Below are positions 4,616 through 64,000 of a DNA stretch of 64,000 nucleotides, in pieces. Within the stretch, counting starts at the first letter, position 1. Each line of letters opens with the position of its first letter. Position numbers and translations under genes: made by a program. Location of the stretch: positions 1-64,000 of IMG/VR virus record IMGVR_UViG_3300027996_002186; one strand, given 5' to 3'. Under the pieces are notes generated by a model, which worked only from the letters and a program-made list of their open reading frames with translations, searched no databases and was not told the origin of the DNA.

Positions 4616-4633
4616 AAATAATATATAGAAAGT

Positions 4634-7044: not shown

Positions 7045-7045
7045 C

Positions 7046-7306
7046 TTATCCTTCTATAAGCCCTATTGGTAATGTCCATTCTACCGTTGCCATTACTGCT
7101 AATATCTCTTCGTGAGTGTATGTAGGTATGGTTGGTGTAATTACTGATACACTACTTGGTATATCTCCCTCCCATTTTAATACAAATTCTGTTTCATCAA
7201 TATTCTTACGAACTGTATCAGCAGATGTCTGTTGGACTTGTGAATAATCTACGTTATTTAATTCAGCTATCGGTGCTATTGCGTATGTCTTATTATTGTG
7301 TGCCAT
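7046..7306 (-). CDS. small conserved phage protein of LamG cassettes
   Basis: VDYSQV.QTS..TVRK..D.T.FVLKW.G; embedded between LamG genes. Confidence 0.7.
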   Translation of the reverse strand: MAHNNKTYAIAPIAELNNVDYSQVQQTSADTVRKNIDETEFVLKWEGDIPSSVSVITPTIPTYTHEEILAVMATVEWTLPIGLIEG

Positions 7307-10821: not shown

Positions 10822-10840
10822 ACACTATATATAAATATAT

Positions 10841-10930
10841 CTAGATACTTTTCGAAATGTTAGCGAATAGATATTTTATATCAAGTGTATTGATAGATTC
10901 GAATAATTTATATCAACTTATATACTTCAT
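10841..10930 (-). pseudogene. relic of an N-terminal-motif gene
   Basis: TTAATATATA-gagca-ATG then MKYIS*YKLFESINTLDIKYLFANISKSI*. Confidence 0.7.
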
Positions 10931-10956
10931 TGCTCTATATATTAATAACGAATTAG

Positions 10957-10964
10957 TATATTTG
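10957..10964 (+). promoter_or_regulatory. Bacteroidota-type -7 box TATATTTG
   Basis: TAnnTTTG consensus ahead of a structured leader and ORF 11100. Confidence 0.6.
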
Positions 10965-10968
10965 TTAT

Positions 10969-11094
10969 ATGAATTGGTACGACTAATTCACCCTATGTGA
11001 AGGTAGGTAAATTTCAAACATGACTTCTCCTCTCTGTTTGTTTCGCCTAGCTGAGCGAGCTCCACTTTTTTGTAGGAAGCGAATCAGTTTTTTT
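10969..11094 (+). ncRNA. candidate structured leader/ncRNA
   Basis: Serial hairpins (TGAATTGG/CTAATTCA; CAAACA/TGTTTG; TTCGC/GCGAA), locally GC-richer, ends in T-run. Confidence 0.35.
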
Positions 11095-11099
11095 ATTAT

Positions 11100-11366
11100 A
11101 TGATAATATTTAATACCATAAAGAAAGCAGAACATTATGTCTCCTACTGTAACAAGAAGGTTGATCGGGAAGAGGGTGGATATGATTGGTCCTCTGTAAG
11201 AACTTTTATAGAGGGTGAATATATTATATGCAATAGCTCCGGTGATGGTTGTGGTTGTGGGTGTGATGATTATATGTATGATTATAATGAAGTAATTGGT
11301 CGTATAAAATCGTATGATAAAAAAAGTATTCGTGGTAATAAACTAAAACAGATCATCGGTTTTTGA
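11100..11366 (+). CDS. hypothetical protein with C-terminal RxxK(L/I)xxI tag
   Basis: GCGCGC cluster; ends IRGNKLKQIIGF. Confidence 0.7.
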   Translation: MIIFNTIKKAEHYVSYCNKKVDREEGGYDWSSVRTFIEGEYIICNSSGDGCGCGCDDYMYDYNEVIGRIKSYDKKSIRGNKLKQIIGF

Positions 11367-11434
11367 ACAGATTTGAACAGAAAAAAATCTACAATATCTC
11401 AATAAATAAATAATTTATATTAATATATATAAAT

Positions 11435-11944
11435 ATGTTATTAAAGTATAAACTTTTTTTAGAAAAAAAATTCGATTCTAGAAAAGATATTGAGGGTTAT
11501 GTAGATGCCAATGAATTGGTTGGACAAAGACTTTGGTTTCATACCAATAGGACTAATCGTAATAACGGTAATAATGGGATGATTGGTGTTTATAGTACAT
11601 CACCTTCTGGTAGAAAAAAGGGTTTAGCTGGTAGGTATACGAATGAAGTTAGACTAACAGATCCTATTTTCTTTCAGACCTCAATAGCAGGATCTGATAC
11701 TATAAAGGCTACAAAAAAGAGAGGTTTAATAGCAGGAGTTTCGGGTGTAGTTGTTGAAACAAATAATGATATAAATAATATGATTCCGATAACTTACAAC
11801 CCCAACGAAAATGGGTATTTTCATGAGGTGGGAGATGTGGATGCAAAAGAAATAATATCGGGTAGTGAGGTATATTTCAACTCAACAGAAGATGGACAAT
11901 GGTTTATCTATGTGAAAAATCCCGTGTATCAATTACTCAAATAG
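11435..11944 (+). CDS. N-terminal-motif phage protein
   Basis: MLLKYKLFLE; TTAATATATA upstream. Confidence 0.8.
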   Translation: MLLKYKLFLEKKFDSRKDIEGYVDANELVGQRLWFHTNRTNRNNGNNGMIGVYSTSPSGRKKGLAGRYTNEVRLTDPIFFQTSIAGSDTIKATKKRGLIAGVSGVVVETNNDINNMIPITYNPNENGYFHEVGDVDAKEIISGSEVYFNSTEDGQWFIYVKNPVYQLLK

Positions 11945-12149
11945 AAAATAAACCGAGTTCCGATTCAAATATTACTCCAAAAATATATAAGCCAAAAAAT
12001 TGGTCGTTGAGTAGCACTGGATTTATAACAATACCAAATTATTGGATTGAAGGAAGACAACCAGATTTACGTTTAGATATCTACGACATATACTTTCTTA
12101 AAGTGGTAATATTAATTTATGATATGTTTATTTTTAATATATAACTATA

Positions 12150-12704
12150 ATGAAACACCTTATAAGATATAATGAGTCTGATGAGTCTGATGATAATAAA
12201 TTAGATATTAAGTATATAGAATCTTGCTTTGCTGAATTAATAGATAATTATATTGATTATAATAATGGTTATTTAGGAAGAAATAGTTGGACGAAAAATC
12301 CTATTACTAGTAGTTTAGAATATGGTGCTGAGGATTATTACAGTAATGAAAGTTGGTCTATTAGGTTATTACTTGAAGGAACACCAACAAATATGTCTGA
12401 TGATCTATCCGATGGTAGTATAAAAACATCAGGGGTTCATAGATCATCATATAGAATTGGATATAAGTTAGGTAAGTTAGTCAAGGACGCAAATGAAAAA
12501 CTTGAGATATTAAAGGAAATTGAAGTGGGTGTTAAACGAATTAAGGAAAAATACCCATCATATAATATAGATTTCAATAAACAATTTACACATAGTAAGG
12601 ATACACAAACCACGATACAAGAATTTATAGTTGTTGGTATTAGTCAACCACATTCAGATCGTTTACGACAGGTTAAATATAACTGGAAAGACGCGAATAT
12701 TTAA
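12150..12704 (+). CDS. N-terminal-motif protein, paralog family
   Basis: MKHLIRYNES; YIESCFAELIDN. Confidence 0.8.
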   Translation: MKHLIRYNESDESDDNKLDIKYIESCFAELIDNYIDYNNGYLGRNSWTKNPITSSLEYGAEDYYSNESWSIRLLLEGTPTNMSDDLSDGSIKTSGVHRSSYRIGYKLGKLVKDANEKLEILKEIEVGVKRIKEKYPSYNIDFNKQFTHSKDTQTTIQEFIVVGISQPHSDRLRQVKYNWKDANI

Positions 12705-48647: not shown

Positions 48648-50648
48648 TTATTTATTATTGTTATTGAATTTCTCAAATTTAGCGATAATCTTTTTATTTG
48701 TATTATCGATAGTCATTAAGCTTTTCCTATCCGTTTTCATTCCTTTTCCAGCACCGGCCCTAATAAATTCTTCTTTTGTTACTGTTGATGGTGTACCATC
48801 GTTATTAACTAATTGATATTCGAAATTTTCATTAGTATCTTGTCCTAATAACTTAACACCTTTGGTATCATAATCAACATCCTCTCCAGATCTAGCAGTA
48901 TCTATCTTTTCTTTAAGAGCATTTACAAAATCTCTAGCTATCTTCTTTAATACATCAACATATTTATCTGTATCATAAGCTATTTTCATCATAGCTTTAT
49001 TATATTTTAATAGATTAAGACCAGCGATATTTGTAATTGATGGGTGACCTCCACTATTTCTTATTACAATTTCCCATACTGGAATTTTGAGATTATTTAA
49101 TAGTGTTTTTTGTTCGTAAGATAAATCTTTATGTAAAACATTCATAGCTTCTTCTAATCCATCTTCTTTAATATCAACATTAAGAATAGTTCTACCCTCT
49201 TTCTTAAATACACAATCAGAATAAAAAGCTTCTAAATCAGAATATTTAAATCCAACACCTTCGTATGAATCACCTTCATCCTTCTTCATTTTTTTCCAAT
49301 CTTGTGAATTTTCAAATTCATTCTTAATTGATTCTAATGATATATAATACTTACTCATCATTGGTTCATACTTAGCTAATACTTCTTTAGAGATTTCTCC
49401 TAAGTTAATATCTTTAAGTATTTTCTCCTTAAATGGATTACAAGAAACTTGTACAAGACCCATTGGCCAAACAATACAGATAAATTCCGCATCCGGGAAA
49501 TTCTTAAATGGTGTATATCTATCATAAGAACCTGGTTTAATCATACTACCACCTCCATATTGCATAAGTATTTTATAATCTTCATCAATATGAATACCCT
49601 TTATAGAACTCTTACCATTGAGAGCTTTTCTTCCTAACCAAGTAACGCTATAAACATTTTTCGGTTTATCTTCAATATAATTTTTATCAAATAATCTATC
49701 AACATACTTAACATACTCTTCGTTAGATATTCCTAGCTTCTTAGCTAATTCAACATCTTGAGAGGCTGGCATTCTGTGTATATTTTTTAGGATGCTTAAT
49801 TCGGTTCTACCAATTTCCATAACATCACCACTTTCACTTTCAACGAATCCGTAATCCTTCATTCTCTCGATATAGTTAGTAAGGTTTGTTTTTATTTCTT
49901 CTGGTGTTGCTAATCTACCAAGCTTATCGCTTGTTTTTGCATTATTAATATAATGTCTAATATTGTTAAACATTGAGTATAAACTCGCAGTTGAGTCTAA
50001 TAATAAACACTCAAGTATATTCTTATTTATGTGATCTCTTTTACCATCTAATGATTTAACAGTTATTCTTTTATTCTTATAAGCTAATAATAATCTATTA
50101 ACCACTAATCCCATCATAAATCTATTCTTTTGTGGTGTTTCTGCCTTTTCATATTTGAATATAGAATTTTGAACATCTTCTGGCTTAATATTATTTCTCA
50201 AGAAATCTGCTGAATCAATTGTTTGAATCATTTTTATATCTTGTGCCGTGAATATATCTGAATATGAAACTTCACCTGATATAATCTCAACATTTGATCT
50301 AGCTGATTTGAAATATGTTGATTCTGTGTCCTCAGCACCAACTTGTTTATCATGATGATCCGATTGTATATGGAACATTGGTTTACCGTGTGCGAAATCA
50401 ACTAAAACTTTTAATGTATCAGGTCTTCCGTTTTTAACAGCATACTCTAATCCACCATATTGAATGATATGACAATCAACTGTTTCTATTTGATAGTAAT
50501 TTTTTAAGAATACACTCATAGCTAATGCTGATGTTACTCCATCTAAATCTTTGTGAAAGTATATCTCACATTCTTTATATCCTTTAGTTATAGCTTTTAT
50601 GTTTCTTAAACCTACTTCCTCGTTTACAAACTCAGTATATTTTTTCAT
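48648..50648 (-). CDS. DHH-family phosphoesterase-like protein with winged-helix insertion and N-terminal motif
   Basis: HKDLDG, VDF, SDHH, DSAD, GGH motifs; ELAKKLGIS...L...NYI...Y.VT.LG wHTH; starts MKKYTEFVNEE. Confidence 0.75.
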   Translation of the reverse strand: MKKYTEFVNEEVGLRNIKAITKGYKECEIYFHKDLDGVTSALAMSVFLKNYYQIETVDCHIIQYGGLEYAVKNGRPDTLKVLVDFAHGKPMFHIQSDHHDKQVGAEDTESTYFKSARSNVEIISGEVSYSDIFTAQDIKMIQTIDSADFLRNNIKPEDVQNSIFKYEKAETPQKNRFMMGLVVNRLLLAYKNKRITVKSLDGKRDHINKNILECLLLDSTASLYSMFNNIRHYINNAKTSDKLGRLATPEEIKTNLTNYIERMKDYGFVESESGDVMEIGRTELSILKNIHRMPASQDVELAKKLGISNEEYVKYVDRLFDKNYIEDKPKNVYSVTWLGRKALNGKSSIKGIHIDEDYKILMQYGGGSMIKPGSYDRYTPFKNFPDAEFICIVWPMGLVQVSCNPFKEKILKDINLGEISKEVLAKYEPMMSKYYISLESIKNEFENSQDWKKMKKDEGDSYEGVGFKYSDLEAFYSDCVFKKEGRTILNVDIKEDGLEEAMNVLHKDLSYEQKTLLNNLKIPVWEIVIRNSGGHPSITNIAGLNLLKYNKAMMKIAYDTDKYVDVLKKIARDFVNALKEKIDTARSGEDVDYDTKGVKLLGQDTNENFEYQLVNNDGTPSTVTKEEFIRAGAGKGMKTDRKSLMTIDNTNKKIIAKFEKFNNNNK

Positions 50649-50698
50649 ATTATTTTTCATATCAGTATAATAATTTTCTTTATTCTTTATATATTAAA

Positions 50699-52725: not shown

Positions 52726-53115
52726 ATGGAATTCTTTTGTGTATATTGCAAGACTCGCAAGAAGTTTGATAAGTTTGTTAAAGTTAACAAAATTAAAAAT
52801 AAGTATATTGTTGATATACGAAGGATTGTTGATGAAGAAGAAGTCGATTTCACTGATGATAAGACTTACCTCAAAATATTAATCTTTAATAAAATTCAAC
52901 AAGCAATAGATAAGAAAAAGGATATTTACTATATTCCAGATTTTGACAAAGACTTTGCAATCGAGAAATTATTAAACCTTAAAAAGATATTAGCCGAGAA
53001 TAACTTCAATGTTCTCATTTTTTACAACGAATTCAGAAAGAATCCAGAAATAATGGATGATGTTCTATCAAACCTTTCTAAATTTTCAAATTCGCAAATT
53101 ATTCGCGATTATTAA
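52726..53115 (+). CDS. hypothetical protein
   Basis: 129-aa ORF. Confidence 0.75.
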   Translation: MEFFCVYCKTRKKFDKFVKVNKIKNKYIVDIRRIVDEEEVDFTDDKTYLKILIFNKIQQAIDKKKDIYYIPDFDKDFAIEKLLNLKKILAENNFNVLIFYNEFRKNPEIMDDVLSNLSKFSNSQIIRDY

Positions 53116-53183
53116 ATAAATAAAGATGTATAATTATTAGTAGAGATTACTAATAATTAATATATACTAAAAAGATATTATAT

Positions 53184-55003
53184 ATGGCAATATTAGGAGG
53201 ATCACCACTAGGACTTATAGGTATTAAAAGTACCCCATCTAGAGATGGTATGTCAACTTTTAATGCTGGGAACTCTCGTAATGTTAATGTTAATAAATAT
53301 AACACAGGTAAACCTAATGAGGGTAGTGCTAAAGGAGGAATGGTATCATTATTCAGTGGTGGTAATGTTGTAAAAGCGTGGGGTAATATTAAAGCTGCAG
53401 GGACCGAGATGGATTCAACTGGACTTACGGATAATTCAAAGGAACTTCTAGATCAACATTACACAACAATGATATTTATGATACTAGTGTGTTAAATTTA
53501 ATAGAGAAATTATCAACTACTCCAGCAAGGCTAAGACCATCTGATTTTGCTTATCTCAAAGATTTAGGTCGTTATCCAAATAATAGACTAATGATAGCTA
53601 GAAGATTTGGTGGAGCAATTGGTGATGATATTATCGGAAAATCTAGAAAGCCGGACGTACAGGCGCTGTTGATAACATGGAAACCAGAGGGTGAAGAATT
53701 TTTTGAAATTTCATTTAGTGAAGACTGGGAAGATGCTGCTGCTGATTTTACTGGTATAATAAATGAAATGGGTGAAGACTTCTTGGGTAAGAGTGTTGGT
53801 AGCGGTATGGGAGCTGCTTTGGGATCTATACCACTCCCTGGATTCACAGAAGGTTTACAAAGACAATTCATGAAAAATTTAGGGATATTTGATAAGCTCC
53901 CAACAAATTCTAAAGGTATCGAGATTTTACCAGCAGGTAACCCTAATATAATTAAAATGGCCAAGAAAAGGAAAACTATCAATGCTGCTGACAAGGGTAG
54001 TGGTTTGAAATGTAGCTTTGCGGTGAAAATGGTGTGTGAATATGAGCAGAAGTTTATTTCGGGTATAGATCCAACAATTGTTTGGCAGGATTTATTAGGC
54101 ACTATGTTAAGGTTCGGTACTTCTAAAAAATCAAGTTATGGATTATCAAAAGATTTTGTTAAAAAAGTAGGTGAATGGTCTACAGATCCAGGTAAAGCTG
54201 TCGCATTTATTGCTAAAAAACTTTCATCCGCGGTCAATGCAATCGCTGATGAAGTTTATGAATTAATTGCAGCCATGACAGAAGATAAAGATGATAAAGA
54301 GGATAGGTTAGAAGAAGAAGCTGCTGAAGCAGGTAATCTAGCTACGGCGTTCTTCAAAGGCTTACTCGCTGATATTAAGAGCTCAGTTGAATCAACTGTT
54401 CTTAAATATAAACATGATATAATGGGTGTTGCTAACGCATTATCTGGTATGCCGTCAACACCTTGGCATATAACAATTGGAAACCCATTAAGACCTATGT
54501 TTTGTTCAGGTGATATGTTAGTTGAGGACACCAGATTAATCGTTGGTGCGGATTTAGCATTTAATGATCTACCATCTAAAATAAGAGTTGAGTTTACTCT
54601 GAAAAATTCTAGACCTTGGGGTTTAGGTGAAATAGCTAGTAAATTTAATACTGGTAATATACGTACTGTGAATACTATTAGGGATTTTTCATCATTAAAA
54701 GCTGGTCAAACTTTACACAACTCACCACTTGAGAATGTTCCAACTCCAAAGGCCGAACCAGTGGGATCAGGACCCGGGGTTTCTAATACAGCCGCTGGTG
54801 TTGATAATACCAATAGTGGAGTAACAACTGAAAACAAAGAAGTGGAAGTGGTTGTTCCTGAGGCTGGAAGTGGATCAGAACCTGAATCTGTTGTAACCGA
54901 TGGAGAGACCACATCCCCTACTGAAGTACAAGTAGCCGCCGAAGCCGCTGCCGCCACAGCCGCCGCAGCCGCAGCACCAGAATCAGAAACACCTGCCCCA
55001 TAA
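53184..55003 (+). CDS. putative baseplate/tail protein, split by a -1 frameshift near 53435
   Basis: Second ORF's frame is open back to TTC AAA GGA ACT at ~53435; TTAATATATA at 53157-53166; PWHITIGNP..P; precedes gp53-like gene. Confidence 0.65.
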
Positions 55004-55018
55004 AAATAATTAATATAA

Positions 55019-55546
55019 ATGAACTTTAAATCACTTGCTGAGTATATAGGAATAAATAAGTATCGAGAATTAGGTGATAATGAAGATGTTTTTTATGATT
55101 TGTTTTCATCTACGTTTAAGTATAATCAACGTATAGTATTATCAGAATATAGAGTTCCTAAGGGGTTTGATATGAGATTAGATTTGGTGTTTCAGGAAAT
55201 GTATAATTTAGAGCCTAATGAAGTTGGTAATTATTTAGAAGATATGGATGTTATATACTTTATCAATAATATTGATAATCCACTTAATATAAAGGAAGGA
55301 CTTGTATTAAAATATCCGCCCGATTTGGGTAACCTACGTGAGTTTAGAGTTCTTAATGTTGATGATGATATTAATCATAAAGATAGAGTGAAAGAGAAAT
55401 TAGCATACCCTAATAAGTCAACTCGTAAAGATAAGTCTAGAGAAAATTTTGTCAAAAATGGGTATTCACTACCACCAGTAGTATTAGAAACACCCAGGCC
55501 ACCAGTTTCAGTAAAAGATGGTAAATTCAATATTGGTGGACTTTGA
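55019..55546 (+). CDS. baseplate wedge gp53/LysM-like protein
   Basis: Y.V.....MRLDLV....Y.......INNIDNPLNIKEG..LKYP. Confidence 0.7.
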   Translation: MNFKSLAEYIGINKYRELGDNEDVFYDLFSSTFKYNQRIVLSEYRVPKGFDMRLDLVFQEMYNLEPNEVGNYLEDMDVIYFINNIDNPLNIKEGLVLKYPPDLGNLREFRVLNVDDDINHKDRVKEKLAYPNKSTRKDKSRENFVKNGYSLPPVVLETPRPPVSVKDGKFNIGGL

Positions 55547-55565
55547 TAAATTTTATAAATAGTTT

Positions 55566-57683
55566 ATGGCTAAAGAACCGGATGTATCAGTAAGAGTTAG
55601 AGCAATTAATACAAATCTAGATGAGAGGCACTCAGGGTTGGGTGATATAGAGGTTCGTGTTATTCATGAGGGTGGTAAAAAATATAAAGTCGCTTGGATT
55701 CCTAAGGGTGGATACGGATATGTTACGGAATTTAAAAAGAAAGGCAAATATGAATTATACACTGCTGAAAACTTTATACATGCTGTGATTTATCAAGCAA
55801 CTAAGATTAAACTTGGAGGAAATTCTTCTATCGTTGATGTTAATGATTATAAATTATTTGGTGATGATCAATATTATGAGATAATACAAAATCCCTTTGA
55901 GCAAAATCCCCCATTGTATAGATCTTTTGGTAATGATCCATATTATTTAAATAATCAAACTAAAGTCAGTATATTTTGGTTTATAGGTGATAAACAATCT
56001 ATATCTAGATTGGAGTTTAGTAAAACTTATGCACAAACTGAAGCAGTTAACTCAGTTAATGCGGTAACTGGGAATTTCGAACTTCGGGCGACATTTGGAG
56101 GTACAGAGGGTGTGTGGTCAGGTGGTGCTCTTTGGAGTCTTCCTAATGGTCGAGAGAAATTACGAAATACCAGAGATACAAATGGTGAGGGTATATTTAG
56201 TGAGGGTAATACATATGATGACAAGGCTGCTTGGGGTCAAATTTATGGATTATATATTGAATCTGATAATACATATGAAGACCCGTTAAATATTATAGAA
56301 TATAAGAAATGTGATATAAAGAAATATGTCTTGATAGAGCATAAAGAATCCGGTGAGAAATTCACACTTGAGGAGAATATGACAGATTTCGTGGGCCCCT
56401 TCACAGGAGAAATAGAAAAACAATATGGGTTTGAAATAGATGGGGAAATACTCGATGTGGAAATACTCGAGTCTATCTTGACTATTTGGAAAAAAAAGGT
56501 TGCTGATTATGATGCACTTGATGTTTGTTATAAGGACTATGGGAATACCAAAGGTAAGGATTTACCTAAACACTTTTCTTGTAATGAGGTTGAGTATAGA
56601 AGTCCTATACAAATAGAACCAAAAGAACCGGAACCTACACCAAACGAAGAATCTGTACAAACACAGGGCACACCAAAGATTAAACTGAGTGTTGTTTTAC
56701 CGGAAGATTTCGAGTTGAAGGTTAAAGAAGATTTAGATGAGGTTAAAGTTTATATAGGTGATCCACCATCAGATGGTTTTGTTTTCCAGGATGATTTTGA
56801 TAATCTAGAAGAGTTGGATCCTGAATATATGGAGTCTGATTTTGAAGGAAGTCAAGAGGTGATAAATACACCAGAAGAGGTTGAAGAAAATATGGAGGTT
56901 GCTAAAGTTGATAATACTGGACCTCCTTCCGCTGTAATATCAACTGGTGATTTTACGTGCTCTGAGCCCCGTCAATCATCCGATAGCACCTTTCAGAATA
57001 ATAAAGTACCTTATTATTTCCAATATGATACTAGATGGAATTATGTCATATTTGGATTATCGAAGGAAAAACAGTTTATAGAGGATGAAATCTTACCAGC
57101 GCTTTCAAGAGGTTCTTCAGGTAAGCTATATACTGTTAATTTTAAAGGAAGTAGTTATAAGATACAATGTGATCATAGAAGTGGGGATAAAGGGTATTCC
57201 GGAATTGGAGGTGGTGGGTGTGGTCCTACTAGTTTGGCTATGGTTAGTAATTACTGGGCAAAAAGGAATGGTAAAGGAGTTTATACATCCCCTGTAAAAA
57301 CAGCAAAAATGATATGTGATCTAGCTATCAGTGCTCGACCTGGTCCACCATGTAGCGGTACTGCCATGCGTACAGTAGAAAAAAAATGTAATGACACACT
57401 ATCTTCGTTATTCGGTTTTAAATTACGGAAAGTCAGTAAGGAGCAAGCGATTTCTAGAATTAAAAGTGGAAATCCAGTTATATGGCAATGTAGGCAAGGA
57501 TCAGGTTACAACAAAACGGGTGGTAAGAAGAAGTATGGTGGTCATTATATGGTGATATCCGAATTTAGAGATGGTAAATTTTGGGTAAGTGATCCTGGTA
57601 ATAAATCCAAAAAGGGTATTGTATATTTAGATTCCACGTTGAGTACTTGTAAAGGTTATTACTTTGAATGTTATAAGGCATAA
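55566..57683 (+). CDS. virion protein with C-terminal C39-like cysteine peptidase
   Basis: YYFQYD.RW, GCGPTSLAMV, GHYMVI, VSDPG (Q, C, H, D). Confidence 0.8.
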   Translation: MAKEPDVSVRVRAINTNLDERHSGLGDIEVRVIHEGGKKYKVAWIPKGGYGYVTEFKKKGKYELYTAENFIHAVIYQATKIKLGGNSSIVDVNDYKLFGDDQYYEIIQNPFEQNPPLYRSFGNDPYYLNNQTKVSIFWFIGDKQSISRLEFSKTYAQTEAVNSVNAVTGNFELRATFGGTEGVWSGGALWSLPNGREKLRNTRDTNGEGIFSEGNTYDDKAAWGQIYGLYIESDNTYEDPLNIIEYKKCDIKKYVLIEHKESGEKFTLEENMTDFVGPFTGEIEKQYGFEIDGEILDVEILESILTIWKKKVADYDALDVCYKDYGNTKGKDLPKHFSCNEVEYRSPIQIEPKEPEPTPNEESVQTQGTPKIKLSVVLPEDFELKVKEDLDEVKVYIGDPPSDGFVFQDDFDNLEELDPEYMESDFEGSQEVINTPEEVEENMEVAKVDNTGPPSAVISTGDFTCSEPRQSSDSTFQNNKVPYYFQYDTRWNYVIFGLSKEKQFIEDEILPALSRGSSGKLYTVNFKGSSYKIQCDHRSGDKGYSGIGGGGCGPTSLAMVSNYWAKRNGKGVYTSPVKTAKMICDLAISARPGPPCSGTAMRTVEKKCNDTLSSLFGFKLRKVSKEQAISRIKSGNPVIWQCRQGSGYNKTGGKKKYGGHYMVISEFRDGKFWVSDPGNKSKKGIVYLDSTLSTCKGYYFECYKA

Positions 57684-57778
57684 AATCTCACATTAGTTAT
57701 TACGGAGATAACGAGTTCTATGATAGTTTATCAAACTAATCGAGTGGTTATTTAAGAACAAGAATACTATCAATATAA

Positions 57779-57997
57779 TTACCAAGTTCTGATAGAACTT
57801 AAAGGTGTATTTCCTGAGTTAGGAGCTGCATCTACAAGTACTAATAAATTAGATAAAGCTAATTCATATGTTGTTCCGGTAGCGGATAAATTAACTTCCG
57901 GCATAATAGCAATGAATAATCCGGGATCGTTTCTTCCTGAAGTAGCAAGTCCGGATGGTTGATAATGTATGTTTATTAGATATGTAGGATTTACCAT
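57779..57997 (-). CDS. small protein, tandem duplicate copy 2
   Basis: MVNPTYLINI.Y.PS...MPEVNLSATG.TYELAL.NLL.LVDAAPN..N.PLSSIRTW. Confidence 0.8.
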   Translation of the reverse strand: MVNPTYLINIHYQPSGLATSGRNDPGLFIAIMPEVNLSATGTTYELALSNLLVLVDAAPNSGNTPLSSIRTW

Positions 57998-58018
57998 TTT
58001 AAGTATTTTTAATTATTT

Positions 58019-58273
58019 TTACCAAGTTCTGATAGAACTTAAAGGTCCATTTACTGGGTTAGGAGCTGCATCCACAAGTATTAATAAATTATCTAAAGCT
58101 AATTCATATGTTGATCCAGTAGCGGATAAATTAACTTCCGGCATACCAGCAACGAAACAAGCAGGTCCATATGTGTTTACTGATGATGTTACACCACCAA
58201 CATTTACGAGTTGTTGTCCACTAAGATGAGATGGACTATAAGATATGTTTATTAGATATGAAGGATTTACCAT
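58019..58273 (-). CDS. small protein, tandem duplicate copy 1
   Basis: Near-identical to copy 2 except the central loop; TTAATATATA at 58295-58304. Confidence 0.8.
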   Translation of the reverse strand: MVNPSYLINISYSPSHLSGQQLVNVGGVTSSVNTYGPACFVAGMPEVNLSATGSTYELALDNLLILVDAAPNPVNGPLSSIRTW

Positions 58274-58311
58274 TTTAATTAGTATATTTTTAATTATATA
58301 TTAATTTTCAA

Positions 58312-59856
58312 TTATATAAATTTATCGAAATCACTTTTTCTGATAAGTGTGTATGTAAAGGTATCTTTATTTGTAACTTTTACTTGATTTTCACAATTAT
58401 TCATAAACTGTTTAAATTGTCTAGATTTCTTAAATACCTGACAGCCTTTCGACCAGTTATAAACATTATTAGAACTACCACCTTTACTAGATCTGTGTAT
58501 ATTTATACCAAATGATCCTTCTTCTGTACTAGCTTTGAAGTTATATGCTCCATCTTTATCATTTCTGTGTACTATACTCTTGGCGTATTTTAGACATTTA
58601 TGATCTTTTTTACCCTGGTGTAATCCTATCTTATATTGATCGATATATTGACCAAGTGCTAACACAGCAACATTTTTCGGTAACTTCTTAGTCTTCGGTA
58701 TAAAACCTGGAGTTGTAGTTACATTATATTCCATCGATATCCATGTGTTATTCACATTTTTAAAGAAAACATAAATAGTATCATCAAATTTATTCGAAAC
58801 GGTTCCATCATCTTTAGTTCTAATACCAACTATATTCATCATACCAACTTGGTCATAAACCACATAACCCTTTGATTGCATAAACCTTACCCACTTATTT
58901 ACTTCCTCATTAGATTCTGTTGATGTCAGATCTATTGGTGGATTTGTGTTTTCTGCTGGTACATCGTCCGGTTCTCCATCCGTTGCTGGTGCAACATAAT
59001 CTTCATCATATTCTTGCTTAGGACCATCTAGAGGTTTGAAATCTTCATCAGTTTTAGCTGTCATATCATTTTCAATTCCTCCTACTTCTTCTGGACCCTT
59101 TGTTGAATCCCAAGCATCCCCTACTTGTGGATCATCTTGTCTTTCAGGGAAAGAGTGGCATCTAACAGCAGTTACTTTATTATTATCTACTATATTAACG
59201 TGATGTGATAGAAAGACCGGATCTCTCAAAGATTTATATTTTAATAGAACTGATATCATTTCTGGATTTGGTACAACCGGAGCTCCCAAGTTTCCTAAAT
59301 AAGGACCGGCTTTGCTACCCAATAGGTTATCCACAAACTCATCAAACCAATCCATCCAATGATTACCTAATATAGCTTGTTGTGAAGCACCAGCATCCCC
59401 AATATTAACATCTCTATTATTATCTTTAAGATTTAAATCAATTGTATCTTCTGTTATATTAATATTATTATACTTATAGTCTATTTTAAGTCCTTCATCA
59501 TCATTAACATAAATTTGTGTTTTGTGATCAAAAATCAAAGACTTCATCGATTTATAATTATCACCATCTAAAGATTCTAACTTCTTTTCTAAATTTACAT
59601 TGTAGTGATCTGAGAATATGAATTCTGGTTTATATTCATCACCTTGGTCAAAAACAACAATTAAAACTTTACCCTTTTCTGGTACATTAAATTCATTACC
59701 ATTTATATCTTTCCATGGTGTAGCCCAGGGTAAATCCTCTAGCTTCATTTCATCAAAAATATCCATAACCCTAACTTTAACTCTCCCGAGTTTCTTAGGA
59801 TCTGCATTGTCTTCGACAACACCTATATATGTTTTGTTAGCTTCTACTTTATTCAT
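58312..59856 (-). CDS. gp5/VgrG-like baseplate hub/spike protein (OB-fold) with C-terminal putative peptidoglycan-acting domain
   Basis: YIGVVEDN.DP.KLGRVKVRV...LPWA.P...VPEKG; C-term GINIH...WSKGCQVF (YkuD-like H/C pair). Confidence 0.8.
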   Translation of the reverse strand: MNKVEANKTYIGVVEDNADPKKLGRVKVRVMDIFDEMKLEDLPWATPWKDINGNEFNVPEKGKVLIVVFDQGDEYKPEFIFSDHYNVNLEKKLESLDGDNYKSMKSLIFDHKTQIYVNDDEGLKIDYKYNNINITEDTIDLNLKDNNRDVNIGDAGASQQAILGNHWMDWFDEFVDNLLGSKAGPYLGNLGAPVVPNPEMISVLLKYKSLRDPVFLSHHVNIVDNNKVTAVRCHSFPERQDDPQVGDAWDSTKGPEEVGGIENDMTAKTDEDFKPLDGPKQEYDEDYVAPATDGEPDDVPAENTNPPIDLTSTESNEEVNKWVRFMQSKGYVVYDQVGMMNIVGIRTKDDGTVSNKFDDTIYVFFKNVNNTWISMEYNVTTTPGFIPKTKKLPKNVAVLALGQYIDQYKIGLHQGKKDHKCLKYAKSIVHRNDKDGAYNFKASTEEGSFGINIHRSSKGGSSNNVYNWSKGCQVFKKSRQFKQFMNNCENQVKVTNKDTFTYTLIRKSDFDKFI

Positions 59857-59863
59857 TATATTC

Positions 59864-61720
59864 TTATCTTCTTTGACCGCCATTAGAGAATCCACCACCA
59901 ACTGCACCACCCAATGAGTCTCCTAAAAACCCAACTAAATCACCCCTTACATCATAGAAAAATCTTTGTGACACATTACTACCAGCATTCAATAATGAAC
60001 CTTGTTCTCCTGGGCCAAGCTCATATATATTTTTGGGTGGTGGTATCGTACCTCCCTGTAATGATATTGCTGCTTTATTTAATGTTCTGGCTAATAATTG
60101 TGCTTTTGTGTTTATAACACCTTGTAATTCTTTTTTAGCAGATGATACCAATCTATCCTTAGCTTTTTTTGCCGCAGCTTTAGCCTTTCCTTTAGATGCT
60201 TTCTTATCTCCTTCTAAACTTTCCCCATCACTCGGTGGATCATCAGCGGTTAGGACTTCAGGAGCCAGTATAATTTCTGTTGTTCCTAATTTATTTATAC
60301 TTTTTAAAACAAATGGTGATTCAACACCATTTTCTCTTAACTTATTTTTACCAACTGTGAAGAAATTTGGTATTGATGTGTCTCCAACTGATTGTGTTCC
60401 TCTTGCTCCTGGGTTACCAATTTTCCAAATAGCACCACTATCATAACCAACATAGCTACCAAAACCATCACCGGTTGGTACAAACTTTTCAAATTTAACG
60501 GCTGAGTATTTATAATCAAATGTTACTGGTGTTGTGCCTTGCGCAGCAATACTACCCATGTCTATCTGAGCTGGGTGAGGTAGTTGGTCAAAAAAGAATT
60601 GACATTCTCTTAGAGAATAAACATATCTAGATACATTATCCTTTATTATTTCTAAATTACCAGTCTCTACTGCTTTTCTAACCCTGTTAAAATTTCTACA
60701 TTCCGAAACTACTATATCACAATTAAATCTCAATAGATTCTCAGGAATCATTCCCTTACCATTTGGTTTAGACCAATATAATAATTTATAAAGATGTGTT
60801 AAAGTACCAACACTCAAAGAAACATCTTCCAAAAAGTCTAATGTTATGACATCTTTTCTATAATCAGTAATATATTTTAATGTTCCTGGTTTATTACTCT
60901 CTACTAAGAAGTTTAGACCTGTTATTTTTTGTATATAATAACCCATATAAGCTTTTTTACCCAATTGAAAAATTGATTTCGAGTTATCAAAACTAGCTGA
61001 GTTTACACCACTATTACTCATTGTTGTTTGTTCTGGATCAATCCTTAATGTTCCTTTTGTTTTGAAAAATTTCAAAAATTGTTGCTTAAAATCCTCATAT
61101 ACTGGTATCCTAGCGGCCATTTCATTTATTCCCTTATATTGATTTAAAAAATCTATCACAGATCCGTTTAATAATGGTGATGATATACCATCAATTATTA
61201 AATCAAATCCATACATAACCGGATCATTATTTTCGAATGGTGTTGCTTTGAATTGACTCAATCTTAAATCAGAAGCACCTTCTGAATTTTCAATTGGTGT
61301 TAACCCATCAATTATTTGTAAACCGTGTTTAAAATAATCCGTTTTATTATCATCAAATATCATATAATGATCTCTCATGGAATAAGGGATATCTTCTAAA
61401 TCTGCACTTGATTTCGGTAAATCTTTACTTTCGTTAAATCTATCCGTAGTATCTAAATCAATTAAACCATTTGGTGTTATTTTCTGACCTAACCAATCTT
61501 CATATTCATATTGTCCATATTTAATTTTAACAGCTTCTTGCTGCTTCCCAAAAACAGACAATGATGGTTGTATCAAAACTGGTGGTAAGAATCCAGAAGT
61601 TTTTGAAAAATCGGGATTTACTAATGTTTGTGGCCAAGGATTACTCACAAAAGCAATAATACTTGATGCTGAGTTAGATATTTTCTCTTTTAAATCTGTG
61701 ATTTTGTCGAATACTCCCAT
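59864..61720 (-). CDS. putative tail/baseplate structural protein
   Basis: 618-aa ORF directly upstream of gp5-like gene; TTAATATATA at 61728-61737. Confidence 0.65.
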   Translation of the reverse strand: MGVFDKITDLKEKISNSASSIIAFVSNPWPQTLVNPDFSKTSGFLPPVLIQPSLSVFGKQQEAVKIKYGQYEYEDWLGQKITPNGLIDLDTTDRFNESKDLPKSSADLEDIPYSMRDHYMIFDDNKTDYFKHGLQIIDGLTPIENSEGASDLRLSQFKATPFENNDPVMYGFDLIIDGISSPLLNGSVIDFLNQYKGINEMAARIPVYEDFKQQFLKFFKTKGTLRIDPEQTTMSNSGVNSASFDNSKSIFQLGKKAYMGYYIQKITGLNFLVESNKPGTLKYITDYRKDVITLDFLEDVSLSVGTLTHLYKLLYWSKPNGKGMIPENLLRFNCDIVVSECRNFNRVRKAVETGNLEIIKDNVSRYVYSLRECQFFFDQLPHPAQIDMGSIAAQGTTPVTFDYKYSAVKFEKFVPTGDGFGSYVGYDSGAIWKIGNPGARGTQSVGDTSIPNFFTVGKNKLRENGVESPFVLKSINKLGTTEIILAPEVLTADDPPSDGESLEGDKKASKGKAKAAAKKAKDRLVSSAKKELQGVINTKAQLLARTLNKAAISLQGGTIPPPKNIYELGPGEQGSLLNAGSNVSQRFFYDVRGDLVGFLGDSLGGAVGGGFSNGGQRR

Positions 61721-61779
61721 AATGATTTATATATTAAAAATATCCTACTCTAATAGAAGTTTGTTGAAAATTAAGGTGA

Positions 61780-63960
61780 TTAAGCAGGGGCGTATTTACC
61801 AGTACCATTTTTTTCGGCTCTAACATCATTATAAGTAGCTAAAGCAGCTTCACACTTCTTTATTCTTTCACCAGCGTGATGTTTGTAATAGTCCCTATTG
61901 GATACTCCGTTTTTATAGATTGCATCAGGCTTCTTTAGTGGTCGGCCGACTGAACCAGGAACCTCAAAGTCACATAAAATTGCTTCACAATAAGCACCTA
62001 TTGTTTGTGTTGGCTTACCACCCTTTTGGTTGATAAAAGTACCATTCTTTATCAACTTAGCTGAATTACCAGATGGAATACCAGCGAACATTTTTTGAAT
62101 TCTACCTCCTTTACCGGAGCTCTGAGTCAATTCAGATATTAAAAAGGCACATTGTGCCTCAAATAAATAAGGCACTGATTTCAAATATACTTCGAGTTTA
62201 TTTAAAGTATCTCTTCCAATCTTAACAGTTCCGCCTCCATGTGGTCTTGGATCTGTATCAAGGAATCCATTCTTCAAAGCTGAAGTCTTAACTCCTTTGT
62301 TAGTTAGATACTCACCACAAAATTTCTCCATGTTATATCTCCTTGAATATGTCCATTGAGCTAAGCCGAGACCAGAGAATACTTGACATTTACCTTTCTT
62401 ACACGTATAATGTTTTACTGATCCTTGTTTTGCGTTCTCTTTTGACCACCGTTTTGCACCCATCCCACCGGGTACTATGTAATTTGCTTGATTTTCAATA
62501 TTCCAAAATTTAAAACTTGATTCTGCATCGATATTACCACAGATACCAGCTGCTTGGTCTTTTGTAAACCCGCCCTCCTTGATTAACAATTCCATCAAAA
62601 TATAAATCGCCTGTCGTTTCGTTTGGTTGTTACTAGGTGATGCTGGTGTAGGAGGTTCACCAGTAGCTGGATCAGCGTCTGGATCATTGGATCCATTCTG
62701 TTCCCGCGCCTCATCCCGCTCCTCAGCTGCTTCTGCTTCTGCCTCCTCTTGACCTAAGAATGCAGTTTCTCGGTACTCATCGTCCAATTCACCAAGTTGT
62801 TCAAAATCATCCTGGAAAACAAACCCACCGGGTTCGATTAGTGTTAATTTACCAATTTTTGAATCTACTATTATTGATAAAGAATCTTCATATGATTTGA
62901 GAGAATCGTTACTAGTTGTTCCGCCGCTTGCACTTCCACTTGATAAAGGAAGAAACACTCCCTCAATTTCAACATTGAATGTTATTATATTTTTTTTTGA
63001 TTCTACATCACCGCTTTGTGAACCCGTAATTACAGGCGCGGGCTCTTCTACTTCTTCTTCTGGTAGTAATTTTATGGGGCTTTTATACTCTACTAATTCT
63101 CCTGAATAATATAAACCTTTTTCACTTTTAGCAGGTGTTGAATTAGCCGCCCCCAATCTACCACCACCTTCGGGGTTATATATGTTACAAGCCACACCAT
63201 TACCAAATATTTTATTAGTGTTCCCATCCTTCGCTGGCCACCTACCGAGTGATGTTTCCTGTGGATCTATCAACTCACATTGACCAACATTATAATTAGG
63301 TACTTTTTTATTCCAAGCAGATAGTATATCATTTATGATATCAACATCATCAACATTACCAGTATATTTCTTTTCTTGCTTCTCTAATTTTGTTGTGGTA
63401 GATTTCCCAGTATCGTCATAAGTCGTTTCATATCCAACCTTAGTAGATAATTCTAATAAATTATCCTCTGTTATATAAAGAACAGATTCTTCGGTCTTCC
63501 ATTGTGGATCAAAAGAAGGGTCACTAGGAGTCCGTATGGTTACCGACTTAATTATTCTAGATTTGATACTTTGATAAATTATCAAACCATTACCATCTCC
63601 AATACTACCATCACTATAATAGGATTGTGTGGGTGATACACCATCAGGTAATGCTAATTCATTACCTTCATCATCACTCCATTGTTCACCACCCAACATA
63701 GTATATGGACCAACAGTGCGCCCAAAGTATGTAGTATCTCCATTTTCATCGACCTGACTAGAAGATGCGCCGAAGTCTGGTGATGTCCATCTAATATCTA
63801 CCCTTGTTCCATTATTTAAATGATAATAATCGGATCCGAAGTTTCTTTTTCTAGCTATATTTACTGACCAGGGGTCCTGTATTATTTCAGAGCCTTTGGG
63901 TATTTTACCCGAGGCCGAATTCACATGCAACCAATCAGCTATGATTTCATCGGAACTCAT
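61780..63960 (-). CDS. virion protein with C-terminal phage tail lysozyme domain
   Basis: QAAGICGNIDAES.F, GLGLAQWT..RR, AQ..F...EL, FEVP; N-terminal scaffold paralogous to 55566..57683. Confidence 0.8.
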   Translation of the reverse strand: MSSDEIIADWLHVNSASGKIPKGSEIIQDPWSVNIARKRNFGSDYYHLNNGTRVDIRWTSPDFGASSSQVDENGDTTYFGRTVGPYTMLGGEQWSDDEGNELALPDGVSPTQSYYSDGSIGDGNGLIIYQSIKSRIIKSVTIRTPSDPSFDPQWKTEESVLYITEDNLLELSTKVGYETTYDDTGKSTTTKLEKQEKKYTGNVDDVDIINDILSAWNKKVPNYNVGQCELIDPQETSLGRWPAKDGNTNKIFGNGVACNIYNPEGGGRLGAANSTPAKSEKGLYYSGELVEYKSPIKLLPEEEVEEPAPVITGSQSGDVESKKNIITFNVEIEGVFLPLSSGSASGGTTSNDSLKSYEDSLSIIVDSKIGKLTLIEPGGFVFQDDFEQLGELDDEYRETAFLGQEEAEAEAAEERDEAREQNGSNDPDADPATGEPPTPASPSNNQTKRQAIYILMELLIKEGGFTKDQAAGICGNIDAESSFKFWNIENQANYIVPGGMGAKRWSKENAKQGSVKHYTCKKGKCQVFSGLGLAQWTYSRRYNMEKFCGEYLTNKGVKTSALKNGFLDTDPRPHGGGTVKIGRDTLNKLEVYLKSVPYLFEAQCAFLISELTQSSGKGGRIQKMFAGIPSGNSAKLIKNGTFINQKGGKPTQTIGAYCEAILCDFEVPGSVGRPLKKPDAIYKNGVSNRDYYKHHAGERIKKCEAALATYNDVRAEKNGTGKYAPA

Positions 63961-64000
63961 ATCTTTATACCTATTACCTTTATAATCCCCTTCACCTAGA

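What the first reader, a model, noticed from the sequence alone, without database searches (positions are those of the whole stretch)
55566..63960. Paralogous tail proteins with swapped cell-wall-enzyme tips flank a gp5-like hub
Seen: 55566(+) and 61780(-) share Y.LNN.T.V.I.W, D..I...IL..W.KKV..Y, VEY[RK]SPI and GFVFQDDF..L.ELD.EY.E..F.G. One ends in a C39-like peptidase and the other in a tail lysozyme. The gp5-like gene between them ends in a third, YkuD-like H/C domain rather than a T4-type lysozyme. Inference: a modular tail-tip system with three different peptidoglycan chemistries on exchangeable C-termini.
Basis: partly seen in the sequence, partly recalled or inferred. Interest (0 to 1): 0.6.

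Follow-up and report, generated by a model that had tools for sequence, protein, structure and literature searches.

The report
Swappable cell-wall enzymes on phage tail
In the tail-spike gene block of a 483-kb huge phage, two sister proteins and the gp5-like spike each end in a different cell-wall-cutting enzyme, and related phages have swapped the sisters' enzyme ends for at least ten other kinds, always just after one conserved acidic motif.

Summary
The proteins at 55566(+) and 61780(-) are true paralogues (BLASTP E 5e-12; all four quoted motifs present and collinear). One ends in a Peptidase_C39_2 domain with an intact Cys-His-Asp triad. The other ends in a Phage_lysozyme2 domain. The gp5-like gene (58312-59856, -) has the OB fold of phage and T6SS spikes and ends in a confidently modelled YkuD-fold domain (Z 8-9.6 to Pgp2, Csd6, DpaA, YkuD and Ldt enzymes) with His and Ser-x-Gly-Cys.

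New here: the paralogues belong to a carrier family of about 42 members with three parts: head, invariant acidic junction motif, cell-wall hydrolase tail. The tails fall into at least 11 unrelated groups. Heads 85-99% identical carry unrelated tails. One near-identical contig shows a clean swap (C39_2 for GH108) starting inside the motif. A second head type, and in one relative the neighbouring structural protein itself, carry the same kinds of tails.

Corrections: two genes lie between the paralogues; the 61780 gene starts outside the window; the gp5-like protein is a spike, not a hub, and its enzyme is not part of the swap system.

Virion location and activity on peptidoglycan are inferred, not shown. 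I rate it a new variant of a known kind, of moderate to high interest.

The parts
55566..57683 (+). Carrier 1 (P0001, 705 aa). It has a type-1 head, a junction motif, a predicted disordered acidic linker and a C39_2 cysteine-peptidase tail.
   Evidence: ORF. Paralogy. Pfam. Family survey. The AF2 model is poor, with residues 331-477 predicted disordered.
56778..56849 (+). Junction motif of carrier 1 (residues 405-428). It is an acidic motif ending in E-Y-x-E-x-x-F-x-G and marks the head/tail boundary.
   Evidence: Conserved in all aligned family members. Found in only two proteins of the 483-kb genome. DNA similarity to contig L027 ends at window 56834, inside this motif.
56835..57776 (+). The swapped cassette. 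It holds the linker, the C39_2 tail and the first 93 bases after the stop codon. In the near-identical contig L027 it is replaced by a GH108 tail.
   Evidence: blastn: window 52900-56834 is 92.9% identical to L027, then there is no match, then 57777 onward is 97.6% identical. Protein comparison.
57156..57596 (+). Peptidase_C39_2 domain (residues 531-677) with Cys552, His660 and Asp676.
   Evidence: Pfam E 5e-14. The triad is invariant in all 7 tails of this type. Best fold matches, on a low-confidence model: PeiR pseudomurein endoisopeptidase Z 10.2 and the 3erv C39-like peptidase Z 9.9.
57779..57997 (-). Small ORF (72 aa) downstream of the gp5-like gene. It is a paralogue of the next small ORF. 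Function unknown.
   Evidence: No Pfam match. Conserved at 97.6% in L027, so it lies outside the swapped cassette.
58019..58273 (-). Small ORF (84 aa), paralogue of the 72-aa ORF. Function unknown.
   Evidence: Internal DNA similarity.
58312..59856 (-). gp5-like central spike protein (514 aa from Met19). It has an N-terminal OB domain, a middle part that could not be modelled, an acidic and proline-rich linker, and a C-terminal YkuD-fold domain.
59626..59829 (-). OB-fold domain of the spike (Phage_base_V).
   Evidence: Pfam E 5e-8. Fold matches: phage P1 baseplate spike 9vzk_q Z 11.8, cyanophage A-1(L) 8kea_D Z 11.4, T4 gp5 1k28 Z 8.7, plus VgrG, PVC and AFP spikes.
58315..58860 (-). YkuD-fold domain of the spike, with His472 and Ser487-x-Gly-Cys490 (numbering from the GTG start).
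   Evidence: pLDDT above 90. Fold matches: Pgp2 Z 9.6, Csd6 9.3, Ldtfm 8.3, DpaA 8.2, B. subtilis YkuD 8.1. Motif conservation. It belongs to a family of more than 1600 mostly free-standing proteins of about 200 aa, some fused to PG_binding_1 or PG_binding_3.
59864..61720 (-). Conserved 618-aa protein (P0003) immediately upstream of the spike gene. Candidate hub or tube-initiator component; function not established.
   Evidence: Conserved next to the spike gene in every related locus whose stored DNA reaches upstream of it. No Pfam, PHROG or PDB sequence match. Weak language-model lead to tail-tube families, score 0.91.
61780..64000 (-). Carrier 2 (P0005, 786 aa). Its first 47 residues are encoded beyond the window, with the start at genome position 64140. 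It has a type-1 head, a junction motif and a Phage_lysozyme2 tail.
62752..62823 (-). Junction motif of carrier 2 (residues 440-463).
62308..62598 (-). The part of the lysozyme-like tail that matches Pfam (residues 515-611). It includes Glu540 in a Glu-Ser pair.
   Evidence: Pfam E 6e-12. The Glu-Ser pair is shared with the related tail of P0013.
52726..55546 (+). Three conserved genes upstream of carrier 1, on the same strand: a 129-aa gene, a 606-aa gene (split in this assembly) and a 175-aa gene. In relatives, the 175-aa gene is always followed directly by either a type-1 carrier or the P6 structural protein.
   Evidence: Synteny in 18 related loci. No family matches.

Best explanation
The window is the first 64 kb of a 483-kb huge phage. 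Its relatives are the Mahaphage-clade genomes of over 630 kb, which are predicted to infect Bacteroidetes. Bases 52.7-64 kb, together with about 2.4 kb beyond the window end, encode the central spike block of a contractile tail.

The spike protein has the gp5/VgrG OB fold. Where T4 gp5 has an internal lysozyme, this one has a YkuD-fold cysteine enzyme tethered at its C-terminus by a flexible linker. The YkuD fold is that of L,D-transpeptidases, L,D-carboxypeptidases and related amidases. A free-standing paralogue of this domain elsewhere in the genome is probably the endolysin. That mirrors the T4 pair of the gp5 lysozyme and gene e lysozyme.

Two paralogous carrier proteins flank the spike and its upstream partner gene. 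Each has three parts: a head of about 430-460 residues, an invariant acidic junction motif inside a disordered linker, and a cell-wall hydrolase tail. The tails here are a papain-like C39_2 peptidase and a lysozyme-like glycosidase.

I infer that the heads fix the carriers to the spike/hub assembly. I also infer that on infection the tethered enzymes cut the glycan strands and peptide stems locally, so that the tail tube can cross the wall.

Across related phages the tails are replaced as cassettes by recombination that begins at the junction motif. The tail tip can thus change its cell-wall chemistry without changing its structural parts.

Shown: paralogy, domain families and folds, catalytic residues, the motif, cassette exchange and synteny. 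Inferred: virion location, activity on peptidoglycan, which bonds are cut, and the role of the motif.
For: Genome and clade:
- Genome identity. Relatives. Clade and predicted host from PMC7162821.
- A contractile tail is likely. A 1309-aa ORF matches sheath domains in collinear order: Phage_sheath_1 at 2.8e-5 and Phage_sheath_1C at 4e-4.

Spike:
- OB fold.
- YkuD fold with His and Ser-x-Gly-Cys.
- Weak Tlde1_dom match, E 0.052.
- 9 of 71 family members carry peptidoglycan-binding domains.
- Free-standing paralogue of 243 aa, 36% identical, motif intact.

Carriers:
- Paralogy.
- C39_2 with an invariant triad, and lysozyme2 with its Glu.
- Junction motif conserved in all members and unique to the two carriers in this genome.
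- Eleven or more tail groups.
- Heads 99% identical with unrelated tails, and heads 55% identical with tails 98% identical.
- DNA breakpoint inside the motif.

Link to the tail:
- A carrier lies next to the spike gene in 14 of 18 distinct related loci.
- A second carrier type sits between P6 and P3, and its head is homologous to the N-terminus of the structural protein P6 (hhalign probability 99.4%).
- In LR756502 a GH19-like tail is fused to P6 itself.
- The P6 and spike genes are also neighbours inside the tail gene block of the cultured Dickeya jumbo myophage JA11.
Against: - There is no proteomic or structural evidence that any of these proteins is in the virion.
- The head has no recognisable fold: the AF2 mean pLDDT is 50, and the PDB and Atlas searches found nothing.
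- P3 and P6 match no known hub protein, so calling this a spike/hub block rests on the OB domain and on gene order.
- The homology of P6 to the JA11 protein is weak: 25% identity over 169 aa.
- The YkuD-like domain does not reach any Pfam threshold. In most relatives its cysteine is Ala or Ser, so the domain may bind rather than cut.
- C39_2 domains are a general protease family, so the substrate need not be peptidoglycan.
- The Phage_lysozyme2 match covers only the first half of the profile.
Confidence: 0.6

Rival explanations
1. The two carriers are lysis enzymes. They would be oversized modular endolysins made late in infection that act on the wall from inside. Their place beside the spike gene would be incidental.
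For: All tail types (C39_2, M15/VanY, GH108, GH19, GH24, CHAP-like) are also classic endolysin catalytic domains. PhaLP lists PF13529 in 260 phage lytic proteins. Domain shuffling is well known in endolysins. There is no direct virion evidence.
Against: - Heads of 300-470 residues with no wall-binding domain are unlike endolysins of Gram-negative hosts.
- Position within the conserved spike block is kept in 14 of 18 distinct related loci.
- A PGH tail is fused to the structural protein P6 in LR756502, and type-2 heads derive from the P6 N-terminus.
- The genome has a separate free-standing candidate endolysin.
Confidence: 0.17
2. The carriers are packaged in the head or tail lumen and ejected with the DNA. 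The junction motif would be a protease cleavage site that frees the enzyme, as with T7 gp16 or T4 internal proteins.
For: The motif sits in a predicted disordered acidic stretch. It contains aromatic-x-Glu, loosely like prohead protease sites (my own knowledge of T4 gp21 sites). It is strictly conserved whatever the head or tail.
Against: - The motif occurs in only two proteins of the 483-kb genome. A general maturation signal would mark many virion proteins.
- The genes lie in a tail block, not a head block.
- No protease link was found.
Confidence: 0.12
3. The system is a polymorphic-toxin-like arsenal aimed at competitors or at superinfecting phages' hosts, rather than an entry device.
For: The design is that of CdiA or Rhs toxins: a conserved head, a conserved junction motif and a hypervariable C-terminal enzyme.
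Against: The swapped cassette holds no immunity gene. It ends 93 bases after the stop codon, and the next ORFs are conserved between the two phages. All tails that could be assigned to a family are cell-wall hydrolases, which suits entry or lysis. The element is a lytic-type huge phage.
Confidence: 0.04

Closest known systems
T4 cell-puncturing device (gp5 with gp27), and the paralogy between the gp5 lysozyme and the gene e endolysin
   Same: The spike has an N-terminal OB fold (Pfam, and Z 8.7 to 1k28). The spike carries a wall-degrading enzyme. A free-standing paralogue of that enzyme lies elsewhere in the genome. The T4 paralogy is from my own knowledge.
   Different: The enzyme has a YkuD-fold His/Cys domain, not a GH24 lysozyme. 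It is at the C-terminus on a long flexible linker, not in the middle. No beta-helix needle could be seen. No gp27-like hub was recognisable.
T6SS evolved VgrG spikes and the Tlde1/Tae5 L,D-carboxypeptidase effectors (bioRxiv 10.1101/2020.02.18.954545, listed)
   Same: A contractile-machine spike with an OB fold carries or delivers a YkuD-like wall enzyme at its far end. There is a weak Tlde1_dom match over the catalytic region.
   Different: The Tlde1 match is far below threshold (14 against 30 bits). This is a phage, with no immunity gene. The domain belongs to a large separate family that has no Pfam model.
Polymorphic toxins (CdiA with its VENN motif, Rhs, phage MuF toxins)
   Same: A conserved N-terminal part and a short invariant junction motif are followed by unrelated, horizontally exchanged C-terminal enzyme domains. 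Near-identical heads carry different tails.
   Different: The tails that could be assigned to a family are cell-wall hydrolases. There is no immunity gene. The motif is unrelated. The context is a tail module.
Modular virion-associated peptidoglycan hydrolases and modular endolysins (PhaLP, PMC8310338), for example the Staphylococcus phage 812 hub protein with a CHAP 'lytic cleaver' domain (9eum)
   Same: Structural tail proteins end in a wall hydrolase. The same catalogue of catalytic domains is used, including PET_C39 (PF13529) and, rarely, YkuD.
   Different: The head family here is an orphan restricted to huge-phage metagenomes. Two carriers plus an enzyme-bearing spike sit in one block. 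Exchange is tied to a defined motif and is seen between genomes about 93% identical.
PeiR/PeiW pseudomurein endoisopeptidases (8z4h, 8z4n)
   Same: Best structural match of the C39_2 tail (Z 10.2; Foldseek 1.4e-4). It is a phage-derived papain-like enzyme that cuts a cell-wall peptide bond.
   Different: About 20% identity, and the model is of low confidence. The hosts would have murein, not pseudomurein. The Pfam family is C39_2, not C71.

Membership tests
T4 gp5-type central spike (tail-associated lysozyme) | N-terminal OB-fold domain | tested here: met
   Pfam PF04717, E 5e-8, 33.6 bits against a cut-off of 23.8. Z 8.5-11.8 to T4 gp5 and to P1, A-1(L), VgrG, PVC and AFP spikes.
T4 gp5-type central spike (tail-associated lysozyme) | Internal GH24 lysozyme domain | tested here: not met
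   No Phage_lysozyme match at E up to 0.1. The only enzyme-like domain is C-terminal and has the YkuD fold.
T4 gp5-type central spike (tail-associated lysozyme) | C-terminal triple-stranded beta-helix needle | tested here: inconclusive
   In the monomer model residues 100-314 have pLDDT below 50 and mixed helix and strand. A trimer was not modelled.
YkuD / L,D-transpeptidase fold enzymes | YkuD catalytic-domain fold | tested here: met
   Model residues 333-510 align to more than 25 independent YkuD-fold entries at Z 7.3-9.6, including Pgp2, Csd6, Ldtfm, DpaA, B. subtilis YkuD and LdtMt1, 2, 3 and 5. Foldseek probability is 0.97-0.99 for 8qzg, 4xzz and 8ikr. Z values of 8-9 are only moderately above the tool's stated background.
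YkuD / L,D-transpeptidase fold enzymes | Catalytic His, and Cys in a Ser/Thr-x-Gly-Cys motif | tested here: met
   His472 and Ser487-Lys-Gly-Cys490, spacing 18. His, Ser and Gly are invariant or nearly so, and Cys is at least 90% conserved in the free-standing family. That these residues overlay the YkuD active site was not checked residue by residue.
YkuD / L,D-transpeptidase fold enzymes | Sequence match to Pfam YkuD (PF03734) or Tlde1_dom (PF10908) above threshold | tested here: not met
   No PF03734 match in any of 71 members. Tlde1_dom matched only in the window protein, E 0.052, 14.4 against 30.1 bits. A PDB profile search found nothing.
Peptidase_C39_2 (PF13529) | Profile match above the gathering score, and a Cys/His/Asp triad | tested here: met
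   53.4 bits against 24, covering profile positions 5-142 of 143. Cys552, His660 and Asp676 are invariant in all 7 tails of this type. A papain-like fold is recovered even from a weak model.
Phage_lysozyme2 (PF18013) | Profile match above the gathering score, and a catalytic Glu | tested here: inconclusive
   46.3 bits against 28.2, but only profile positions 6-68 of 140 are matched. Glu540 in a Glu-Ser pair is conserved with P0013. The fold was not modelled.
Virion-associated peptidoglycan hydrolase | Being a component of the virion | not testable with these tools
   Only indirect evidence: synteny with the spike gene, fusion of a tail to P6, and the P6 and spike genes as neighbours in the tail block of Dickeya phage JA11.
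Virion-associated peptidoglycan hydrolase | Hydrolysis of peptidoglycan | not testable with these tools
   Needs enzyme assays on sacculi.
Polymorphic toxin systems | Conserved junction motif before a variable C-terminal domain | tested here: met
Polymorphic toxin systems | Cognate immunity gene travelling with the variable domain | tested here: not met
   The exchanged segment (window 56835-57776) contains no further ORF, and the flanking small ORFs are conserved between the two phages.

The most novel reading that the evidence does not exclude
Huge phages of Bacteroidota may run a polymorphic-toxin-style diversification system for their tail-tip wall enzymes. In this reading the invariant acidic junction motif has two roles: it is the docking or processing signal that loads any tail onto the spike complex, and it is the recombination anchor for cassette exchange. 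The rapid turnover of wall chemistries, together with the decay of the spike's own YkuD-like active site in many lineages, would then record an arms race with host wall modifications or hydrolase inhibitors. In the same reading, the Pfam-less YkuD-fold family of more than 1600 clusters is a major unrecognised endolysin class of crAss-like and other Bacteroidota phages.
Probability: 0.3. Interest if true: 0.75.

Novelty: new variant of a known kind. Interest (0 to 1): 0.58.

Why it matters
Tail-borne wall hydrolases and modular lysins are known. This case adds three things.

1. Enzyme ends of structural proteins are swapped as cassettes between phages that are otherwise about 93% identical, at one defined motif. 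That gives a concrete, testable handle on how tail tips adapt to cell walls.
2. A gp5-like spike carries a YkuD-fold enzyme in place of a lysozyme, with a free-standing paralogue elsewhere in the genome. This repeats the T4 logic with a different chemistry, and parallels the T6SS Tlde1 effectors.
3. The spike's domain points to a very large, unannotated family found in crAss-like and other Bacteroidota phages. It may be their missing lysin and a source of new enzymes active against Bacteroidota walls.

Tried and rejected
Searches that found nothing:
- Sequence searches of P0001, P0005 and the profiles of the head family, P3 and P6 against the PDB gave nothing usable.
- PHROGs and Pfam gave nothing for the head, P3, P6 or the upstream genes.
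- The AF2 model of P0001 was too poor to read the head (mean pLDDT 50). The wide VIA search matched only its C39 tail.
- The ESM Atlas search gave no usable hit for the head. For P3 it gave only a weak tail-tube lead.

Hypotheses tested and dropped:
- hhalign showed the type-1 head is unrelated to P3, P6 and the spike. It shares only the 16-column motif with type-2 heads.
- The YkuD-like domain does not occur among the carrier tails: an HMM of it matched none of them.
- The junction motif is not a general virion-processing signal: it occurs only twice in the genome.
- The spike linker has a loosely similar E-Y motif that is conserved among spikes. I do not count it as the same motif.
- The C-terminal extensions on relatives' spikes matched no family and no carrier tail.

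Not run:
- Complex prediction, because there was no reason beyond neighbourhood to pick a pair.
- Read laying and the look-up of sequencing runs, which were not needed.
- The large representative protein search and the third word search, because the word search and family scans had already answered the question.

Full report
**What the window is.** The window is bases 1-64000 of a 483,262-bp virus record estimated 98% complete. G+C is about 29%, there are many short genes on both strands, and no tRNAs were found. By tblastn the spike gene's closest relatives among deposited phage records are five huge uncultured-phage genomes, LR745206 and LR756501 to LR756504, of 635-735 kb. Al-Shayeb et al. 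place these in the Mahaphage clade and predict Bacteroidetes hosts (PMC7162821). A 1309-aa ORF about 42 kb past the window end matches sheath domains in collinear order, below Pfam thresholds, so a contractile tail is likely.

**Checking the observation.**
- The ORFs are as described. BLASTP gives E 5e-12 over about 400 columns.
- The minus-strand gene continues past the window end to a start at genome position 64140, giving 786 aa. With the full protein, the N-termini also align, E 4e-8.
- Pfam gives Peptidase_C39_2 for the first protein (E 5e-14), Phage_lysozyme2 for the second (E 6e-12, first half of the profile only), and the Phage_base_V OB domain for the gp5-like protein (E 5e-8).
- Two genes lie between the paralogues: a conserved 618-aa gene and the gp5-like gene. 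Relatives of the gp5-like protein start to align at its Met19, which also removes the overlap with the upstream gene.

**The spike and its third enzyme.**
- I folded the spike with an alignment of 14 full-length relatives and 70 members of its C-terminal family. The OB domain and the last 200 residues are confident; the latter have pLDDT above 90. The middle is not modelled in a monomer.
- The OB domain matches the spikes of phage P1 (Z 11.8), cyanophage A-1(L), T4 gp5 (Z 8.7), VgrG, PVC and AFP.
- The C-terminal domain matches more than 25 independent YkuD-fold entries at Z 7.3-9.6. The best are the L,D-carboxypeptidases Pgp2 and Csd6, then Ldtfm, DpaA and B. subtilis YkuD.
- The domain has His472 and Ser487-x-Gly-Cys490, the spacing and motif of L,D-transpeptidase active sites.
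- It reaches no Pfam threshold. The only hint is Tlde1_dom at E 0.052 over the catalytic stretch. A PDB profile search found nothing.
- The domain belongs to a family of more than 1600 clusters. These are mostly free-standing proteins of about 200 aa with no Pfam label. They occur in crAss-like, Bacteroides, Tenacibaculum and Pseudoalteromonas phages, among others. Nine of 71 sampled members carry peptidoglycan-binding domains.
- The same genome encodes a free-standing paralogue of 243 aa, 36% identical, with the motif intact. It is probably the endolysin, as in the T4 pair of gp5 and gene e.
- In 10 related huge phages the spike's cysteine is Ala, and in others Ser. Those spikes carry extra C-terminal extensions of unknown type.
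- In LR756501 the spike has no enzyme end at all.
However, this domain varies by presence and decay, not by swapping.

**The carrier family.**
- A word search with the shared head found 26 relatives, and 13 more came from loci around spike homologues.
- All members share the acidic junction motif at the head/tail border.
- The 200-320 residues after the motif fall into at least 11 groups with no detectable similarity to one another. They are: C39_2 (7), VanY (5), an M15_4-like group (5), GH108 (4), Phage_lysozyme2 (2), two groups with weak CHAP/Amidase_6 signals (9 and 7), and four single tails (GH19-like, M15_4, a weak M15_3 match, and one with no match).
- Head and tail histories disagree repeatedly:
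  - Heads 99.4% identical carry unrelated tails.
  - Three heads 90-96% identical carry three different tails.
  - Heads only 55% identical carry tails 98% identical.
- A 5-kb contig matches window 52900-56834 at 92.9% DNA identity. It loses all similarity from inside the junction motif. It regains 97.6% identity at 57777, which is 93 bases after the stop codon. The segment in between encodes GH108 instead of C39_2. No other ORF travels with the cassette.

**A second head, and fusions.**
- In relatives, the slot between the large protein P6 and P3 (occupied here by carrier 2) holds proteins with a different head, the same junction motif, and tails of GH19-like, GH24 or SLT-plus-M15 type.
- That head is homologous to the N-terminal region of P6 (hhalign probability 99.4%). 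It shares only the motif with the type-1 head.
- In LR756502 there are no separate carriers at this locus, and a GH19-like tail is fused to P6 itself.

**Is it a tail module?**
- In most related loci the gene order is: helicase, P6, slot 1 carrier, P3, spike, then on the opposite strand a carrier, a 175-aa gene, a 606-aa gene and a 129-aa gene. In four loci the order is simpler and collinear, without carriers.
- P6 and the spike OB domain are also adjacent in the cultured Dickeya jumbo myophage JA11. There they sit among genes annotated as tail tube, sheath and VgrG-like. The homology is weak.
- P3 and P6 match no known hub, and the head has no recognisable fold.
- Tail-tip location is therefore a reasoned inference, not a result.

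**Mechanism and rivals.**
- I favour, at about 0.6, a spike complex that carries three tethered wall enzymes for local digestion during entry. The junction motif would mark the boundary at which tails are exchanged, and probably serves as a docking or processing element.
- It is not a general processing signal, since it occurs only twice in the genome.
- The rivals are oversized endolysins (about 0.17), ejected internal proteins freed by cleavage at the motif (about 0.12) and a toxin-like arsenal (about 0.04). The last is weakened by the lack of any immunity gene.

**Comparison and novelty.**
- The system works like T4 gp5 and like evolved VgrG or Tlde1 delivery. Its diversification pattern is that of polymorphic toxins.
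- It is not a T4-type gp5, because there is no GH24 domain. By sequence criteria it is not a Pfam YkuD member.
- C39-like domains are already listed in 260 phage lytic proteins and YkuD domains in 10 (PhaLP). A phage hub protein with a cysteine-peptidase end has been solved (9eum).
- I therefore rate this a new variant of a known kind, with interest 0.58.

Noticed in passing
window 53184-55003 (indel at about 53434): The 103-aa and 504-aa ORFs are a single 606-aa ORF in two otherwise identical contigs (L007, L008). The window lacks one T in a short T run. This is a frameshift or an assembly error in a conserved gene of the spike block.
   Followed up: yes
genome 86074-86805 (L025:3074-3805, +), outside the window: A free-standing 243-aa paralogue of the spike's YkuD-like domain, 36% identical, with the His and Ser-x-Gly-Cys motif intact. 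It has an inserted stretch that looks to me like a peptidoglycan-binding repeat, although Pfam gave no match. It is a likely endolysin.
   Followed up: partly
L009, L012, L013, L015, L018, L020-L024 (spike genes at about 10000-12200 of each locus): In these related huge phages the spike's YkuD-like domain has Ala in place of the catalytic Cys (Ser in L014 and L019). The proteins also carry extra C-terminal extensions of 100-215 aa and at least three unrelated kinds, none matching a known family.
   Followed up: partly
window 57779-57997 and 58019-58273 (-): Two small paralogous ORFs (72 and 84 aa) lie directly downstream of the spike gene. They have no family match. One copy is present in the near-identical contig L027. 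A spike-tip or assembly role is possible but untested.
   Followed up: partly
window 52726-53115 (+): The 129-aa protein is 72-93% identical across the 16 related loci that hold it (84% or more in all but one), whereas its neighbours are 40-55% identical. It has no family match. Such strong constraint suggests a core structural part.
   Followed up: no
L002 (LR756502) 4507-7158: The P6 homologue of this 642-kb phage ends in a GH19-like domain homologous to a carrier tail (E 5e-24), but without the junction motif. This locus has no separate carriers.
   Followed up: partly
genome 105526-109458 (L026:5526-9458, -), outside the window: A 1309-aa ORF has weak, collinear matches to tail-sheath domains. 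It would be an unusually long sheath protein.
   Followed up: partly
genome 66454-68058 (L006:5454-7058, -), just outside the window: A UvsW-like helicase gene (ResIII/DEAD, Helicase_C and UvsW_N matches) borders the spike block in most relatives. Structural genes and a replication gene sit together here, which is unusual.
   Followed up: no
window 48648-50660 (-): A 670-aa protein has weak DHH phosphoesterase and winged-helix (HTH_45/MarR) matches, all below Pfam thresholds. It is conserved in most relatives, though only partly in some.
   Followed up: no
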